Of a DNA stretch of 64,000 nucleotides, positions 31,901-51,894 are shown in pieces. The DNA is from Piromyces finnis finn (Eukaryota; Fungi; Neocallimastigomycota). The notes under the pieces are model-generated. The model had not been told where the DNA came from. It did not search any database and worked only from the letters and a program-made list of their open reading frames with translations. Both the position numbers and the translations under genes were made by a program. The stretch lies in NCBI GenBank assembly GCA_002104945.1, contig MCFH01000006.1, positions 186,001-250,000 of the forward strand, in the 5' to 3' direction. Numbering within the stretch: the first letter of the stretch is position 1; each line of letters starts with the position of its first letter.

Positions 31901-33916
31901 TTACCAATTTCTTTTAATATTATGACTTCTATAAATAACAGTTTTTGGCCTAATCCCTTCTGAGATAGAATATGATTCTGTTATAGATGCTGTTGTATTA
32001 CAGTTATGGAATGCGAAAAGAATATTATAATTTTCAATAGCCCAACGTACAAATGCACCAACAGTACCTTCCTGTGCTACTGTTGCCATTTCGAAATCTT
32101 CTAAAGGTTTTCCACTTTTAACTAAATTAGGTGCCCATACAATAGCTAAATTAGATGCAGACATTAAATTAACTTTTGAATGATTATTGACTTCATTTAA
32201 AAGACGACAAATTTCAGCAAATAATATGCGATTATTAGTTGATAATTTATCTAGTATGTTTTCATTAATTTTTATGGCTAATTCTGAAGTTTCCAATTCA
32301 TCTTTTTAGATATTTGCATATATATATAATAATATAAATTTTTGAAAATTTTATAATATTTAAAATAAATATATTAATAATATTATTATAATAATTTTCA
32401 AAAAAAAAAAAAAAATTCATTGTAATATTTCTTTAATTACAATAAACAAAAAAGATAAAAAAAAATATATATATATATATTCTATTCCAAAGATATTTAC
32501 AATTTATTTTTCTAAATTCAGGATAAAATTCAGGTGGAAATATTGGTTTTGGTAATTCTCTAACAAATGTTTTTAAAATAACAGCAGCTAAGTGAGAACT
32601 GTTTAAAGTTTGTATTGTAATATTGGGATTTCCAGTATTATAAGCTTCTTTTACTGTTTTTATTAAATGTATGGATGGTGATCTTCTAAATAAACCTTCT
32701 TCTTCTAATCCATTCTCTAATAAAAATTTAATTGCATCATTAACAATTTTTGGTAATCCAAGTTCACCTTCATCACCCATAATGAGTTCTAATGGTACTC
32801 CAAATACATTAGATGAATTAATATTTGGTGGGGTATAATCACTTGCTTCGCTTGAATTACTTGAAGAACTACTTGAATCTTCTATAACAGGTTGTCTATT
32901 TGAAGTTATTTTATCAAGAGAATATCTCCTTTCATATCTTTAAAAATTTTATATAAAATATAATTATAATTTTTTTTTTTTTAATTTTATTAATATATAT
33001 AAAACTTTTTCAAAAATAAATTATATCGCTAAAAACAAATATAATAAAACAAGTACTCGAATATTCTTAGAGGTATATTAATTTCATTATATGGTATATA
33101 TCTACTAAGTTGGTATAAAGAATTTATCCATAATATTTTTTGACCGAATTTAGGACTATATTTAATAATAGACATAAAATAAAAATATTTTATAAATATA
33201 ATTAAAAATAATTAATAAAGTATAAATGTAATGAGTATGGATTATAATTTTACCTTAATATTTTTGTAAAAGTTGCAACTAAAACTTTAGTCCAAAATGA
33301 AGGATGAACAATATATAAATATTTTAGGTTTTTCTTATAGCTGTATCAAGTTATTATAATAAATTGTTGATATCAGTATTGAAAAATAACGAACTTTTAT
33401 AAATTTTTTTTTAAAATTTTTATATACCTTCTACTCATGGCTTTGTATGTTTGAATTACCCAAGACCATGATGGTTTATAAACTGTATCACTACAAAATA
33501 AAATTAAAACATAATCATGTTCAACTACTGAATTCAAATTTTTAAGAGCAAATCTGAATTTTTGTATTATGATATATATTCATAATTTCATAATTAATTA
33601 TATATTATTATGATAATATTAATAAAATAATATATATATTTATAAGTTTCGTAGTTTAATTTACTCTGTAAATAAATCATAGTTAGTAGCTTGAGGGTCA
33701 GGTAAACTTGATAAATAAAGACTAATTACTTGCCGATTTTTATTATCTTTTCCTGAATTTATGAATATTAATAAATTATAAATAGGTATATATTTCTTTT
33801 TTTCGAGAATTTTATATTTATTTCATTTTATAAATGAATTTTTTTTCATTACCTTTAATACTAACTAAATTATTATAGATATTGCGATATTCGTTTTCAT
33901 AATTATAGGAATCCAT
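31901..33916 (-). CDS. BCH/Sec14-like plus RhoGAP protein (ARHGAP1/ARHGAP8-like)
   Basis: Exons give DYVLILFCSDTVYKPSWSW, YKKNLKYLYIVHPSFWTK, SPKFGQKILWINSL (BCH domain), then VFGVPL, EEGLFRRSPS (arginine finger present), AVILKTFVRELPKP and NLMSASNLAIVWAPNL. ATG at 33916; the 3' end is uncertain. Confidence 0.88.
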
Positions 33917-38263: not shown

Positions 38264-39256
38264 ATGAAGGTTTTCAATATTTCCATCTTAACAAACTCTT
38301 CTCCAGCCAAATTACTTTGTTCTGAACAAGATTTATCTTCATTTGGTTTCTTCCAACGTGGAAGGTAAATTAGATAAATATATATAAAAATGATAGTATC
38401 TTATAAACAATTAAATTTATATGAGTGAAATTTTAAGAAATGATTAATTATTTCTATTATTTTATAATAATAATTAAATTTTAATAGTGTTCAAGAATTT
38501 ATTAATTTCTTCTCTACAACTGCTGCCGAAAGAACTCAAGTTGGTGAAAGATCTAAAATTGAACAACAAAGTAACTGCTTATAAATTTTTGTTATAAAGT
38601 ATTTTCTTTAAAAAAAAAAAAAAAAATTCAAAAGATTTAATATTAATATTTTCATAAAAAAATATCAATTATATGTATATTTTTTTTAAAGGTTATATTG
38701 GTTATGTCTATTCTAATTCAAATGGTCTTGCCGGTGTTGTTGTTACTGATACTGAATACCCAAGTCGTGTAGCTTTCTCAATTATTAATAAAGTATTAGA
38801 TGATTTTACTCTTAAATACAAGAAAAGTGACTGGGAAAATTTAGATTCTAAGAATAGATTACCATTCCCAGAATTAAAAACTTATCTTACTGATTTCCAA
38901 GACCCACATAAAGCTGATCCATTCATGAAGGTTCAACAAGAATTAGATGAAACTAAAGTTATTTTAGTAAGTTTTTAAAATATAAAAAAATTAATAAGAT
39001 AAAATCTTTAATAATTGATTAATAATAAAATTTAATATATTATTAAAAATTAAATTTAGCATAAAACTATGGATTCTTTATTACAAAGAGGTGAAAAGTT
39101 AGATGATCTTGTTGCCAAATCTGATCAATTATCATCTCAATCAAAAATGTTTTACAAAACTTCCAAGAAGACAAATACTTGTTGTTACTTAATGGTAATT
39201 ATTTTATAATTTTGAAATAGTAATTTTAGTATTATGTTAAAATATATTAATATCCT

Positions 39257-39312: not shown

Positions 39313-39813
39313 AAAAATAAAAAAATCTTGAGTATATGAACGAAGTATTTAATTCTTTAATTCATTCGATACTAAGGGCATATGATATAAAATTACATGA
39401 ATCGAAATAAATAATATATAATAGATTATCAATAGAAAAAACAATAATTAAAAAAAAAAAAAAAAAAAAAACATTTTATATAATAATTTAGGTGATAATT
39501 ATAAAGATAAAAAATTTAAATAATAATAAAAAACGAATAAAATGATAAAATAAAATAAAATAAATAAAATAATAATAAAAAAATAAAAAAATATTATATA
39601 TACATATCAATCGTAGTAGTTGATTGATTTTAACTTTGATTTAAATTATTTTATTGATTTATTTATATTTTGTATATATATATATATGCTTTTTTTTTTT
39701 TTTTTTTTTTTTTTTTTTCGTAATATTAAATATTTATTTCTCTAAAAATTTTATACATTAAATATTTTTAAAATAAGAAAATTTTATTATCGTTTTCAAT
39801 GATTAAGAGTAAT

Positions 39814-42800
39814 TCAAACTTTACATGTGTAAGGAATTACACACCAATTTCTATTTTCGTAACCCCATTTTATACCATCTTCTTCTGTTTCTATTGTACA
39901 ACCTTCACAGCAGTCATAACCTTCAACTTCTTCACATTTTTTATTTTTTTCTGTATAGAATGGATCGCAAATATTTGGAGAAATACCACACCAATTATCA
40001 TTTTCAAAACCCCACTATATCATACATACAAAAAAATTATATAAAGATAAAAAATAAATAAATAATAATTTATTATTATTTATTATTATTATTATCATTA
40101 TTACAAAAATATTTAGATCTATTTTTTATCAATATACTAATATTAATATACTTACATTTCCAAAGTCATCAATATATTGGAGTTCACATGTGTTGCAACA
40201 AGGAAAACCAAATCTTGTGGAATGTCTACAAAGAATTGGTGGTTCATAACATTCATCTGGAATGCCACACCATTCTCCATTTTCATAACCGTACTTTATA
40301 TTTTCATCAATAAATTTAATTTCACATGAATCACAACATCTATAGCCTAATTTCATTGCAGCATCACAAACATATGGTTTACAACATTTTGGTTTAGGAA
40401 AATGTTTTGTGTAATATTGTGAGTAAAGACCTTGTGCTAATAATATTTCACATTGTTCCCAAAATCTGTGATATTTAAAAGTAGGAATGGTTGTTCCTTT
40501 ATTTAAAAAGGTATTTATTATTTTCCAATCTTTGTCCTTTTTATAGTATGGACGTATGGAGATAAAGGTTGATTTATCATTAATTTTTGATGATCTTCCA
40601 TACATTCCTTTAAATCCTTCTGGTATTGGTAATTTTTTATTAAAACGACGATATTGATAAAAAGTTTCGGTTACTGAATAACCTTGACTATCTTTACTTG
40701 ATATTTCTATTCTTTCTAAAATATCTCTACCAAGCGTTAGATAATCTTCATTATTATTTTTTTTTCCAATTAATAATAAGATTTTTGACAATGAGGCAGC
40801 AACACCAATACTATTGTTATAGTCTTCAACGATAACATTTAATTTATCATTTTTGTGATTCTTTATACCATCCTTTTGATTCCAATCTTTTGGTTGTCCT
40901 TCAAAGGTTAGCTTATTTGGAATTTTAAATAATCGATCACTTGTTAAATGAAAAACGGATAAAACCCAATCTAACCATTTTGTTATTATAATCTCAATAT
41001 CCTTATCTTTAGTAATATAATAAAGTTCAGCAAGACTCTCAAAAACATAACATTGAGTACCTTTTGTATAATATAAAAAAAATAATATTATAGATAATAA
41101 TATAATAATAATAATAATAAAAAAAAAAAAGTAATAATACAAAAAATGTTAGATATTAAAAATTATATTATGGTTAATGAAAAAGAAGTAATAAAAAAAT
41201 GTTAGAAATTAATTATTATTATTATTATTCTTTTTTTTCGTTTATACAACTAATAATATAATATTTAATAGGTAGGGTGAATCATGTACCAAATAAATTA
41301 TTTTCTTCAACTTCAAAATTTTTTGAGAATATTAAATTATAAAAGGAAGGCATTTTTTTTGAGCTTAAATTATGATTTGAAGGGTATTGAGCTACACCAA
41401 CAATAGCTCCTTCAGAACTTTGTAACCATCGTATAAATTCAATTTGTCTTTGGTATGATTTCTTCCATTTTGATACAAATTCAGGGTTTTCTGAATTGAA
41501 GTTTTTATCATTTGATAAGACATAAGCAATTAATGGATTTTGACTTCCAATACCAATAATATCTGTAGTAACTTCTTTTTCTAACCACTTTCCTTCCATA
41601 CTGCCTTTCCATGAAAAGTATCGAGATAATAAATAATTCTTATTGTCTTCATTTGATTCGGAATCAAATGATTGTAGCGAATCATCACTATTAATAAAAT
41701 ATAACATATAATCACTCATTTTTATGATTTTTTTAAGTATTGGTTTCATAAATTTATTCTTTTTTTGCTCAGTTGACCAGCAATAAGCCCTATAAACCGA
41801 TTCTATTATTTTTGAAATGTAACGAGAATCACTAATATATTCCCATTGCTTTATTTCAGTAATTTCATTATCCAAATATGGATTTAAATAATTATTAGAG
41901 TTAATTATACTTGGATAAAATAATGAACACCATATTGAATCTTTATCATTATTTTTATGATTTTTAATGAATCTTTTTTTATTTTTGCTACTAAAATATT
42001 TATTCCCTATAATTTTTTTTTTAAAAAAAAAATAAAAGAAAGAAAAAATATAAAAATATTTAAAATTAATAAATATATCTTTATTATATATAAAAGTAAT
42101 ATAATTTATTATTTGTATGAAACTACAATTATCGGTATCAATAATATTATGTGGTAAATCTTTAAATATTTAATATATATTTAAATATAATAAATTTATG
42201 TTATATATATATATATATAAAATAGTGTTATTTAAGAAAGAAATATCAAAATAGATAATACTATATTATATTGCTTAAAATCATATTAAATATTACATAG
42301 AGACCAGGTTTGATATTGTTCATATAATTCTTTATAAAGTGAATCCTTTGTATTTATTGAATTATTTGTTGTTGAATAGTATTTACTATTTCCTTTTTGA
42401 CTTTCATCCTTTGGTATCATATTATTTTCAAATATGTTCCATGCATTAACTAAATATATATATTAATTTAACATAATATTTATATTTCTGTAAGCATTCT
42501 TTTTTCTTTCTTTCTCATTAATTAATTGAAGGATAAAATATATATCAAGAGTAACATATTTATTTAAATGGATATAATATTAATTACCAAAAGGTTTCCA
42601 TTTTCCTGAAATTTTTCCTTGTAATGCTTCTATCCATAGTTTATATGAAATTTCCTTTAATGTTGTTAAATGACCATAATCTACATTTTGATCTATATAT
42701 AGGGTTTCTAAAGTAGAATATGGTATTGAATCAGCATTGTAGTATATAGAGGAAGAATTATTTATATTTAATTTATCATACTAAAAGGATATATTAGTAA

Positions 42801-43081
42801 ATTTTATAAATATTTATAATTTACTAATTATTAATATAAAAATATCTTTACATGATTTTGATATATTTCAATAAAGGAAGGTAATGGAGGCTATTTAAAA
42901 TATATATTCAATATTTTAGTTACACATATATATTCTTCTGTTTTTGAGTAATATTTATAAAGTACATTTGGAAATATCTATAAAAAATTTTAAATTTTAC
43001 TTTGGTTGGAACTGCATTTAATTTTGCTATTAAATTAAGAGATAAAAACAATTGAGTATACTTTAATAATAACCGACCCAT
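39814..43081 (-). CDS. Secreted, highly divergent GH48 (Cel48-like) protein with 3 fungal dockerin (NCDD/CBM10-type) domains; 8 exons, 773 aa; catalytic positions substituted
   Basis: Exons 43081-43001, 42890-42852, 42780-42588, 42449-42297, 42159-42127, 42006-41290, 41060-40156 and 40014-39814 are all GT-AG and phase-consistent (2322 nt). GH48 motifs: IPYSTLETL, DYGHLTT, IDTDNW, KQWEY, QNPLIAYVLS, RQIEFIRWLQSSEGAIVG, YHRFWEQ. Dockerins: GYRCC..YGYENGEWCG, GFPCC..WGFENDNWCG, GYDCC..WGYENRNWCV. Confidence 0.9.
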
Positions 43082-43662
43082 TAAGACAATATAATATTGC
43101 AAAAGAAAGTTTGAATTTATTATTATATTATTATTTTTAAATTGCTTGGTTATTTAAATTTTTTTAAAACTTTTATATTGTATTATTTAATGAATTATAT
43201 TTTTTTATTTGAAAGTAATTAATATTTGTTATAATCAATTTTAGTATTTGGTTTCCTTATTTCTTTAATACATCTTTCTTTTTTTTTTTTATTATTTTTT
43301 ATTTTTTTTTTTTTTTATTTGTTGAGTATATATATTTAAAAAACTTAGGATACAATATAAAATGTTAATTATTTTTTTTTATCAAAGGTTTACTTTGAAG
43401 TCATTAAATTTTATATTTAAAACTTTAATTATTGTGTTTAAAAAAACCAATATAATTACTTTATTAATTAAACATTAATAATTAATTATAGTTGATGAAT
43501 CAATTTTTTATTATTAATACAAGAATAATGTACGAGTATTAAAACATTTTGTAAATGTAAATACGAAAATATACTTTTAAAGGATAAAAGGATATTTATT
43601 ATTAAATATAAAATAAAAACTGATACAATACAATATATAAAATAATAATAATAATAATTATA

Positions 43663-44430: not shown

Positions 44431-51894
<7,464 letters not shown>

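What the first reader, a model, noticed from the sequence alone, without database searches (positions are those of the whole stretch)
39814..43081. Intact dockerin-bearing GH48 with both catalytic positions changed to basic residues: candidate non-catalytic cellulosome subunit
Seen in sequence: an uninterrupted 8-exon, 773-aa ORF with a signal peptide, a full-length GH48 scaffold and three dockerins with intact Cys/Trp patterns. Established knowledge: GH48 exocellulases use the Glu of DYGHxTTSEAxSY as acid (Cel48F E55 / CelS E87) and the Asp of QWRYTNAPDA as base (E55's partner D230 / CelS D255). Here the motifs read DYGHLTTLKEISY (Lys codon AAG, 42657-42655) and QWEYISDSRY (Arg codon CGT, 41824-41822). 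Several tunnel aromatics are also gone (MHWL to LPHNI, SWYYAW to SRYFSW, NTWFG to NNLFG), and a roughly 25-aa loop appears deleted, while other Trps and YHRFW remain. Inference: this is a maintained pseudo-enzyme that is still cellulosome-targeted, possibly a cellulose-binding or amorphogenesis subunit, a structural spacer, or a binder of an acidic ligand. GH48s are major components of gut-fungal cellulosomes, and I know of no described inactive paralog. Caveat: a Glu lies one residue after the Lys and an Asp two residues before the Arg, so a register-shifted active site cannot be excluded by eye.
Basis: partly seen in the sequence, partly recalled or inferred. Interest (0 to 1): 0.85.

Follow-up and report, generated by a model that had tools for sequence, protein, structure and literature searches.

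The report
Conserved non-catalytic GH48 cellulosome protein
This anaerobic gut fungus gene encodes a cellulase-shaped (GH48) protein with three cellulosome-docking modules that has lost the cellulase catalytic and sugar-binding residues, yet several fungal genera keep it intact, expressed and under selection, so it looks like a repurposed, probably non-hydrolytic, cellulosome subunit that no paper I found describes.

Summary
An 8-exon, 773-aa gene lies on the minus strand (39814-43081). All its introns are GT-AG. It encodes a signal-peptide-like N-terminus, a full GH48 domain and three fungal dockerins (CBM10).

- **Catalytic positions.** Ungapped alignments to solved GH48 structures put Lys82 at the catalytic acid (Cel48F E55) and Arg228 at the base (D230).
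- **Not a decaying copy.** Orthologs at 71-80% identity exist in Anaeromyces robustus, Neocallimastix californiae and N. lanati, Pecoramyces and one unnamed lineage. All carry K/R at both positions. The A. robustus and N. californiae genes have the same seven intron positions. The flanking genes are shared with A. robustus (both sides) and N. californiae (upstream).
- **Selection and expression.** Pairwise dN/dS is 0.16-0.23. Intronless transcript contigs exist in other taxa. Four RNA runs of the window's organism hold 63-65% of the locus words, which fits a spliced mRNA.
- **Remodelled cleft.** Twelve of 16 near-invariant catalytic or sugar-contact sites are replaced or deleted (for example W298 to R, Q181 to K). 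Neighbouring charges are swapped. Domain pI rises from about 5 to about 9, and half the Trp residues are lost.
- **Fold.** An AlphaFold2 model of an ortholog keeps the GH48 fold (TM 0.88).

Best reading: a maintained, non-cellulolytic, dockerin-borne GH48 derivative. A binding or structural role, perhaps for an anionic partner, is inference. Databases label these proteins only "Six-hairpin glycosidase", and I found no published description.

The parts
39814..43081 (-). Whole gene: 8 exons and 7 GT-AG introns; 773-aa product plus stop codon
   Evidence: The same exon pattern occurs in A. robustus and N. californiae.
43001..43081 (-). Exon 1 (aa 1-27): start codon and signal-peptide-like N-terminus, ending ...NAVPTK
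   Evidence: Exon 1 is 81 nt in the orthologs too, and AVPT[KN]PP is conserved. The signal peptide was judged by eye.
42852..42890 (-). Exon 2 (aa 28-40)
   Evidence: It is 39 nt in all three genomes.
42588..42780 (-). Exon 3 (aa 41-104): first GH48 block, holding the acid-position motif DYGHLTTLKE
   Evidence: Pfam PF02011, E 9e-13; PDB alignment.
42655..42657 (-). Codon AAG = Lys82, at the catalytic-acid position (Cel48F E55, CelS E87)
   Evidence: It is K or R in every ortholog.
42297..42449 (-). Exon 4 (aa 105-155): region carrying the 21-residue deletion relative to Cel48F positions about 108-128
42127..42159 (-). Exon 5 (aa 156-166): LPHNIIDTDN, where W154 is replaced by N160
   Evidence: It was not sent to any search tool afterwards.
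41290..42006 (-). Exon 6 (aa 167-405): central GH48 block
   Evidence: Pfam PF02011, E 6e-34; PDB alignment.
41954..41956 (-). Codon AAA = Lys184, replacing the sugar-contact residue Q181
   Evidence: K in all six clade sequences compared.
41822..41824 (-). Codon CGT = Arg228, at the catalytic-base position (Cel48F D230, CelS D255)
   Evidence: It is K in all other orthologs.
41621..41623 (-). Codon CGA = Arg295, replacing the tunnel tryptophan W298 (SWYYAW becomes SRYFSW)
   Evidence: R in all orthologs.
40156..41060 (-). Exon 7 (aa 406-707): C-terminal GH48 block, dockerin 1 and the first half of dockerin 2
   Evidence: Pfam PF02011 E 7e-52 and CBM_10 E 7e-10; PDB alignment.
40249..40386 (-). 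Dockerin 1 (aa 631-676), fungal dockerin / CBM10
   Evidence: CBM_10 hit in exon 7. It also matches the Piromyces Cel45A dockerin structure 2j4m.
39967..40230 (-). Dockerin 2 (aa 683-723), split by intron 7 (40155-40015)
   Evidence: By sequence. Orthologs score three CBM_10 stretches.
39823..39936 (-). Dockerin 3 (aa 734-771)
   Evidence: CBM_10 hit in exon 8, E 4e-10.
39814..40014 (-). Exon 8 (aa 708-773 plus TGA stop)
38264..39197 (+). Downstream neighbour: a longin/synaptobrevin gene, used as a synteny anchor shared with A. robustus
   Evidence: tblastn of A. robustus flank ORFs, 85-93% aa identity; Pfam labels of the A. robustus gene.
45485..48361 (+). Upstream neighbour: a large low-complexity protein, used as a synteny anchor shared with A. 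robustus and N. californiae

Best explanation
The gene encodes a maintained, expressed GH48-derived protein that no longer works as a cellulase.

**Origin (inferred).** It probably arose by an old duplication of the horizontally acquired fungal GH48. It then diverged very fast on its stem branch and has since been held under purifying selection as a single-copy, syntenic, intron-bearing gene in several Neocallimastigomycota genera.

**What the sequence shows.** It keeps the GH48 (alpha/alpha)6 scaffold, a secretion signal and three fungal dockerins. It has lost the acid (E to K/R), the base (D to R/K), the helper residues E44 and H36, and most sugar-stacking tryptophans. Neighbouring charges are swapped, and the domain has changed from acidic (pI about 5) to basic (pI about 9).

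**How it most likely works (inferred).** The protein is secreted and docked to the cellulosome scaffoldin through its dockerins. There it acts without hydrolysis, as a binding or structural subunit. Its basic, remodelled cleft and surface would engage an anionic partner. Candidates are uronic-acid-bearing plant polymers such as pectin or glucuronoxylan, or the acidic cellulosomal enzymes themselves.

**Shown versus inferred.** Shown: gene structure, residue replacements, conservation, selection, transcription and (on an ortholog model) the fold. Inferred: secretion, cellulosome docking, absence of hydrolytic activity and the nature of the ligand.
For: - **Gene model and motifs:**
- **Role of the replaced residues:** E87/E55 is the proton donor and D255/D230/D225 the base. 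E55Q inactivates Cel48F and E44Q leaves about 1% activity (PMC2953488; PMC4055089).
- **Cleft sites:** 12 of 16 near-invariant catalytic or sugar-contact sites are replaced or deleted, and the replacements are shared across the clade.
- **Orthologs:** at 71-80% identity in A. robustus (ORX85904.1), N. californiae (ORY21412.1), N. lanati, Pecoramyces and an unnamed lineage.
- **Gene structure and synteny:** identical 8-exon structure in A. robustus and N. californiae; shared flanking genes.
- **Selection:** NG86 dN/dS is 0.16-0.23 over all pairs, against 0.32 for a canonical GH48 pair from the same two species.
- **Transcripts:** intronless contigs L002, L003, L004 and L006. L006 equals the spliced N. 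californiae CDS exactly.
- **Expression of the window's own gene:** four RNA runs hold 0.63-0.65 of the sampled words, against 0.99 in the DNA run. Exons are 0.66 of the stretch searched.
- **Charge and Trp content:** domain pI 8.6-9.2 and 16-18 Trp, against pI 4.8-5.5 and 28-32 Trp in 28 canonical fungal GH48s.
- **K/R interchange:** K and R interchange at both former catalytic positions, which argues for a charge role rather than precise chemistry.
- **Fold:** the AlphaFold2 model of ortholog P0153:26-624 has pLDDT 87.8 and pTM 0.92, with TM 0.87-0.89 to GH48 crystal structures.
- **Phylogeny:** the clade is monophyletic (100) on a stem of 2.63 substitutions per site.
Against: - No activity, binding or proteomic data exist. 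A rumen metaproteome supplement lists only two-dockerin GH48s, and Orpsp1_1|1191449 was not found, although one of its files was cut when stored.
- Glu83 and Asp226 are invariant in the clade and sit next to the lost acid and base. A shifted or new active site therefore cannot be excluded without coordinates.
- Several cleft residues survive (Y299, W302, E542, W611, D74, H77, D162/D164 region), so some glycan binding or catalysis could persist.
- The cleft positions are about as conserved as the rest of the domain (9 of 18 invariant against 58% overall). This gives no special signal of a precise ligand site.
- Dockerin function and secretion are inferred from sequence only.
- The structure model is of an ortholog, not of the window's own protein.
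Confidence: 0.75

Rival explanations
1. Neo-enzyme. The GH48 scaffold was re-tooled for a different reaction or substrate. One option is a hydrolase using Glu83, Asp226, Asp70 or Glu537. Another is a lyase-like activity on uronic-acid polysaccharides, in which Lys/Arg neutralise a carboxylate and Tyr296 acts as base or acid.
For: - Purifying selection and clade-wide conservation of the remodelled cleft residues K184, R295, Q71, S225, L404 and E537.
- Invariant new acidic residues E83, D226, D70 and E222 beside the new basic ones.
- Tyr296 and W299 are retained.
- The domain is strongly basic.
- From my own knowledge: (alpha/alpha)n-toroid polysaccharide lyases use Tyr/His with Arg/Lys/Asn.
Against: - K and R interchange at both key positions, and S/T, Y/F and N/Y vary at others. 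True catalytic residues are usually invariant.
- The paired changes look like charge-swapped salt bridges: R/K224 to E222 together with D230 to R/K228, and E55 to K together with A56 to E.
- No similarity to any PL family was detected. Only GH48 structures scored high.
Confidence: 0.15
2. Register-shifted cellulase. Glu83 and Asp226 take over as acid and base, so the protein is still a cellobiohydrolase.
For: Both residues are invariant in the clade and lie within two positions of the originals.
Against: - H36, E44, W154, Q181, T226, K274, W298, Y403, W411 and W417 are also replaced or deleted.
- E44Q alone leaves about 1% activity in Cel48F (PMC4055089).
- Residue 83 is the third residue of a helix and points about 100 degrees away from residue 82 (secondary structure; the geometry is inferred).
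- Half of all Trp residues are lost.
Confidence: 0.04
3. Decoy. An inactive paralog that soaks up inhibitors or binding proteins aimed at the abundant canonical GH48s, like the PsXLP1 decoy for the GH12 enzyme XEG1 in Phytophthora (from my own knowledge).
For: It is an inactive, conserved, secreted paralog of the dominant cellulosomal enzyme. [quoted passage not shown]
Against: A decoy must mimic the target's surface. This domain is only about 31% identical to canonical fungal GH48, with reversed net charge and remodelled loops. No GH48 inhibitor is known to me.
Confidence: 0.04
4. Decaying pseudogene or annotation artefact.
For: Both catalytic residues are lost, and the stem branch is very long.
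Against: - Intact ORFs in at least six lineages.
- Conserved introns and flanking genes.
- dN/dS of about 0.2.
- Spliced transcripts.
Confidence: 0.01

Closest known systems
Canonical fungal cellulosomal GH48 (Cel48A of Piromyces, Neocallimastix and Anaeromyces, e.g. P0182, P0183, P0192)
   Same: - Same Pfam family (PF02011), same fold and same phylum.
- C-terminal fungal dockerins (CBM10).
- The ML tree places the two clades together, though only weakly (support 36).
   Different: - Only about 31% identity, whereas canonical fungal and bacterial GH48s share about 50%.
- Acid, base and 10 further conserved cleft residues are lost.
- pI about 9 against about 5, and half the Trp.
- Three dockerins against two.
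- Seven conserved introns and 25-27% GC, against intronless genes of 42-44% GC.
- A single copy was found per genome in the searches run, whereas canonical GH48 is multi-copy.
Bacterial GH48 cellobiohydrolases Cel48F (1F9O), CelS (1L1Y) and C. bescii CelA GH48 (4EL8)
   Same: (alpha/alpha)6 barrel, with TM 0.87-0.89 for the ortholog model. Alignable end to end.
   Different: - E55 to K/R, D230 to R/K, E44 to Q, H36 to S/T, W298 to R, Q181 to K, W411 to L, W417 to Y/F.
- T110 and Y403 are deleted, and a 21-residue loop (about 108-128) is missing.
Catalytically dead glycoside-hydrolase homologs kept as binding proteins, e.g. GH18 chi-lectins such as YKL-40 (from my own knowledge)
   Same: The GH fold is kept, the catalytic acid is replaced, and the gene is conserved under selection. 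This is the pseudoenzyme or lectin route.
   Different: Different fold and family. Chi-lectins keep the sugar-binding aromatics, whereas here most are lost and the cleft turns basic. This one is delivered on dockerins into a multienzyme complex.
Beetle GH48 proteins reported as chitinases rather than cellulases (from my own knowledge; papers listed were not read)
   Same: They show that the GH48 scaffold can be redeployed in eukaryotes after horizontal transfer.
   Different: The one beetle sequence that I aligned (P0282) was not among the rows with changed catalytic or cleft residues, and it clusters within the bacterial GH48s.

Membership tests
GH48 (sequence family, Pfam PF02011) | Significant match to the family profile above the gathering score | tested here: met
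   Exons 3, 6 and 7 score 48, 118 and 177 bits against a cut-off of 25. Ortholog P0153 scores 390 bits, against 862 for canonical P0182.
GH48 (fold) | (alpha/alpha)6 barrel superposable on solved GH48 structures | tested here: met
   The AlphaFold2 model of ortholog P0153:26-624 has pLDDT 87.8 and pTM 0.92. Foldseek gives TM 0.87-0.89 and E 1e-39 to 7e-44 against 14 GH48 entries. This was tested on an ortholog 71% identical to the window protein, not on the window protein itself.
GH48 cellobiohydrolase (enzyme) | Catalytic acid Glu (Cel48F E55 / CelS E87) | tested here: not met
   Lys82 in the window; K or R in all orthologs.
GH48 cellobiohydrolase (enzyme) | Catalytic base Asp (Cel48F D230 / CelS D255 / T. 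fusca D225) | tested here: not met
   Arg228 in the window; Lys in all orthologs.
GH48 cellobiohydrolase (enzyme) | Conserved sugar-contact set (H36, E44, W154, Q181, T226, K274, W298, Y403, W411, W417 and others) | tested here: not met
   All ten are replaced or deleted. Only Y299, W302, E542 and W611 are kept.
GH48 cellobiohydrolase (enzyme) | Hydrolysis of cellulose or cello-oligosaccharides | not testable with these tools
   Needs a recombinant protein assay.
Fungal dockerin (CBM10 / DOC2) cellulosome component | CBM_10 modules with the Cys/Trp pattern | tested here: met
   CBM_10 hits in exons 7 and 8, and three stretches in the orthologs. There is also a match to the Piromyces Cel45A dockerin structures 2j4m and 1e8p.
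Fungal dockerin (CBM10 / DOC2) cellulosome component | Binding to scaffoldin, or presence in purified cellulosomes | not testable with these tools
   The protein was not found in the held text of one rumen metaproteome supplement. This is inconclusive.
Pseudoenzyme (maintained catalytically dead homolog) | Loss of catalytic residues together with conservation under purifying selection and expression | tested here: met
   residue loss; dN/dS 0.16-0.23; conserved structure and flanking genes; transcripts.
Pseudoenzyme (maintained catalytically dead homolog) | Demonstrated lack of any catalytic activity | not testable with these tools
   Needs biochemistry. A new activity is not excluded.

The most novel reading that the evidence does not exclude
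The clade is a GH48 scaffold that evolved a new molecular function inside the fungal cellulosome: a basic-cleft module that specifically recognises, or even cleaves in a lyase-like way, anionic plant or microbial polymers such as pectate, glucuronoxylan or glucuronan. That would make it the first GH48-derived lectin or non-cellulase enzyme, and a new class of cellulosome subunit.
Probability: 0.15. Interest if true: 0.85.

Novelty: new variant of a known kind. Interest (0 to 1): 0.66.

Why it matters
GH48 is described as the dominant dockerin-fused enzyme of gut-fungal cellulosomes (PMC8262932), and it is a benchmark processive cellulase. A single-copy, catalytically disabled GH48 with reversed charge and three dockerins, conserved across genera, implies that fungal cellulosomes carry a dedicated non-hydrolytic subunit that no paper in the searched library describes.

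Public records call these proteins only "Six-hairpin glycosidase". A metaproteomic study I checked annotates fungal proteins by CAZy module string, such as GH48-DOC2-DOC2. CAZyme counts made that way would presumably score these proteins as cellulases, which would overstate cellulase gene numbers.

If the protein binds an anionic polymer or organises acidic enzymes, it would be a new part for designer cellulosomes. It would also be a clear case of pseudoenzyme evolution after horizontal gene transfer: intron gain, compositional amelioration towards the host genome, and charge-swap remodelling.

Tried and rejected
- **Read laying.** There is therefore no per-base RNA coverage or splice-junction evidence for the window's own gene. 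Only the share of words held by the runs is available. Local scripts did read the whole window file, for a tblastn synteny check and for the spliced model.
- **Window protein as a query.** The full spliced window protein has no reference id and is not in the protein collection. The structure prediction therefore used ortholog P0153 and not the window protein.
- **Side-chain geometry.** The position of Glu83 and Asp226 could not be examined, because the tools return no coordinates.
- **Origin of the clade.**
  - The tree only weakly joins it to canonical fungal GH48 (support 36).
  - A count of exclusively shared residues was uninformative: 5 with fungal canonical GH48 against 3 with a three-member bacterial cluster.
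- **Proteomics.** A search of the PMC8026616 supplements for ORX85904, ORY21412, Orpsp1_1|1191449 and a three-dockerin GH48 found nothing. One file was cut when stored, and the JGI ids of most orthologs are unknown to me.
- **P0151 coding sequence.** The look-up of encoding contigs for P0151 found no record.
- **Rejected readings.** Decaying pseudogene (see rivals). A tandem-duplicate origin at this locus: the ORFs of at least 110 aa between 30000 and 52000 show no second GH48, and the flanking genes are the same unrelated genes as in A. robustus.
Full report
**1. The observation**

Reading the minus strand of 39600-43400 and splicing it in a script gives eight exons: 43081-43001, 42890-42852, 42780-42588, 42449-42297, 42159-42127, 42006-41290, 41060-40156 and 40014-39814. 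All seven introns have GT-AG ends. The CDS is 2322 nt and the product 773 aa.

Pfam finds Glyco_hydro_48 in exons 3, 6 and 7, and CBM_10 in exons 7 and 8. The second of the three dockerins spans the last intron, so it is seen only by eye in the window. Orthologs score three CBM_10 stretches.

phmmer against PDB chains aligns both catalytic motifs without gaps.

I transferred Cel48F numbering through a close homolog, P0167, using its printed alignment to 1F9O. This confirms E55 to K82 and D230 to R228. The literature in the held library assigns:
- E87/E55 as proton donor;
- D255/D230 (T. fusca D225) as base;
- E55Q as inactive;
- E44Q as about 1% active (PMC2953488; PMC4055089).

**2. It is not a lone, decaying copy**

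A search of 1.84 billion representative proteins with exon 7 found one relative at 74% identity. Everything else was at 38% or below. A follow-up search and a cluster look-up gave full-length orthologs in:
- Anaeromyces robustus (ORX85904.1);
- Neocallimastix californiae (ORY21412.1) and N. lanati (KAG4097496.1);
- Pecoramyces ruminantium (Orpsp1_1|1191449);
- an unnamed lineage known from metatranscriptome contigs (P0153), plus an Anaeromyces-like fragment (P0154).

They are 71-80% identical to each other and about 71% identical to the window protein. The window's own protein is not in the collection.

Every ortholog has K or R at the acid position ([DE]YGH[LI]TT[LI][KR]E) and K at the base position (QWEY.SDSKY). 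The window has R at the base position.

The A. robustus and N. californiae genes have the same eight exons, with lengths 81, 39, 193, 150-153, 33, 711-717, 905 and 195-201.

The flanking genes are shared. A longin/synaptobrevin gene lies downstream (window 38264-39197, 85-93% aa identity to the A. robustus neighbour). A low-complexity protein of about 2200 aa lies upstream.

**3. Selection and expression**

Nei-Gojobori dN/dS is 0.16-0.23 for all pairs. A canonical GH48 pair from A. robustus and N. californiae gives 0.32 by the same crude method. That pair's dS is probably depressed by codon bias, so the comparison is only a rough control.

Contigs L002, L003, L004 and L006 are intronless and carry the ORF. 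L006, from a Logan run assembly, equals the spliced N. californiae CDS base for base. The gene is therefore transcribed and correctly spliced in other taxa.

For the window's own organism, four RNA runs from three studies hold 0.63-0.65 of the sampled words of 39700-43200. The DNA run holds 0.99. Exons make up 0.66 of that stretch. This fits a spliced mRNA.

Junction-level evidence for the window is therefore missing. I worked beside those places afterwards.

**4. What has changed in the protein**

I aligned 178 GH48 domains (6 clade members, 28 canonical fungal, 144 bacterial or other). I compared 20 Cel48F residues, mostly those that PMC4055089 lists as catalytic or sugar-contacting:

| Cel48F residue | State in the clade |
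|---|---|
| H36 | S/T |
| E44 | Q, with an inserted Asp before it |
| E55 | K/R |
| T110 | deleted |
| W154 | N/Y |
| Q181 | K |
| T226 | I/N |
| N227 | S |
| D230 | R/K |
| K274 | D/N |
| W298 | R |
| Y403 | deleted |
| W411 | L |
| W417 | Y/F |
| Y299, W302, E542, W611 | kept |

Of the 16 sites that are near-invariant in other GH48s, 12 are replaced or deleted.

Around the former active centre the changes look like charge swaps, and each is invariant or conservative within the clade:
- E55 to K/R together with A/T56 to E;
- R/K224 to E together with D230 to R/K;
- A228 to D;
- D232 to I/V/T;
- K274 to D/N;
- G303 to K.

A 21-residue loop (Cel48F positions about 108-128) and several smaller loops are deleted.

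The domain's computed pI is 8.6-9.2 (net +6 to +20), against 4.8-5.5 (net -13 to -33) for all 28 canonical fungal domains. Trp count is 16-18 against 28-32.

Identity to canonical fungal GH48 is about 31%, whereas canonical fungal and bacterial enzymes share about 50%.

An AlphaFold2 model of ortholog P0153:26-624 is confident (pLDDT 87.8, pTM 0.92). Its weak stretches lie broadly where the alignment places the remodelled loops. The model matches GH48 crystal structures at TM 0.87-0.89.

**5. Origin**

In an LG+C20 tree of 62 domains the clade is monophyletic (100). It sits on a stem of 2.63 substitutions per site, against 0.83 for the canonical fungal clade. In the best tree it falls on the same side of a branch as the canonical fungal GH48s, but with support of only 36. 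A within-fungus duplication of the horizontally acquired GH48 is therefore the most economical reading, not a demonstrated one.

Two further contrasts stand out:
- The canonical genes examined are intronless and 42-44% GC.
- This gene has seven conserved introns and 25-27% GC, close to the genome's 15-25%.

That suggests long residence as an ordinary fungal gene.

**6. How it most likely works**

Shown: an intact, conserved, transcribed gene for a GH48-fold protein that lacks the cellulase machinery and carries three dockerins.

Inferred: it is secreted, docks to the scaffoldin, and acts non-hydrolytically.

Several observations fit an electrostatic binding or structural role better than a new precise catalytic site:
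- K and R interchange at both former catalytic positions.
- The paired changes look like swapped salt bridges.
- The cleft is no more conserved than the domain average (9 of 18 aligned cleft sites invariant among four full-length members, against 58% overall).

Loss of the stacking tryptophans argues against cellulose-chain threading. The basic cleft and surface suggest an anionic partner, which could be uronic-acid polymers of the plant wall or the acidic cellulosomal enzymes.

I put about 0.75 on 'maintained non-cellulolytic dockerin-borne GH48 derivative', and perhaps a third of that on the anionic-partner detail.

Rivals:
- a neo-enzyme, including a lyase-like chemistry (0.15);
- a register-shifted cellulase using E83 and D226 (0.04);
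- an inhibitor decoy (0.04);
- a pseudogene (0.01).

**7. Comparison with what is known, and novelty**

By sequence and fold this is a member of family GH48. It fails the defining features of the GH48 enzyme (acid, base and sugar-contact set).

It works like the maintained catalytically dead GH homologs known elsewhere, such as GH18 chi-lectins (my own knowledge). It differs in that it also loses the aromatic platform, reverses its charge, and is delivered by dockerins.

Three full-text searches found no description of an inactive or divergent GH48. Public records call the orthologs only 'Six-hairpin glycosidase'. I rate it a new variant of a known kind.

**8. Limits**

- No biochemical or proteomic evidence.
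- No coordinates, so the Glu83/Asp226 geometry is untested.
- The structure model is of an ortholog.
- dN/dS comes from a simple counting method at high divergence.
- The organism of the window was not identified.

Noticed in passing
L007:1001-3286, L008:1001-3280, L009:1001-3280, compared with window 39814-43081, L001:6001-9610 and L005:6001-9352: Canonical GH48 genes of A. robustus and N. californiae are intronless and 42-44% GC. N. californiae has two identical copies in inverted orientation about 500 bp apart on one contig. The catalytically dead paralog has seven conserved introns and 25-27% GC. The two GH48 lineages therefore have very different genomic histories or expression regimes.
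   Followed up: partly
L003:270-311 compared with L006:187-235: A N. californiae metatranscriptome contig uses an acceptor 49 nt inside exon 3. This shifts the frame, so the called ORF (P0001, 658 aa) starts at an internal Met. It is either an alternative or erroneous splice isoform, or an assembly effect.
   Followed up: partly
Proteins P0095 (1402 aa), P0035 (737 aa), P0018 (889 aa) and P0207 (fungal, 772 aa): A few other GH48 sequences in the alignment also deviate at the catalytic positions: P0095 has E55 to K and D230 to V; P0035 has S and A; P0018 has D and C; fungal P0207 has D and G. Other catalytically altered GH48 lineages may exist. Alignment error was not excluded.
   Followed up: no
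window 44891-49267 (+): Two long ORFs (734 and 670 aa) encode a low-complexity Asn/Ser/Thr-rich protein with tandem PPPPMAGTPG(I/V)S(A/T)TP repeats. It is orthologous to proteins of about 2200 aa beside the same gene in A. robustus and N. californiae.
   Followed up: partly
window 38264-39197 (+): A longin/synaptobrevin (R-SNARE-like) gene is highly conserved with A. robustus (85-93% aa identity over the exon pieces). It is the downstream synteny anchor.
   Followed up: partly
window 31901-32780 (-): Two ORFs encode pieces that look like a RhoGAP domain, judged by eye from the translation. This was not checked.
   Followed up: no
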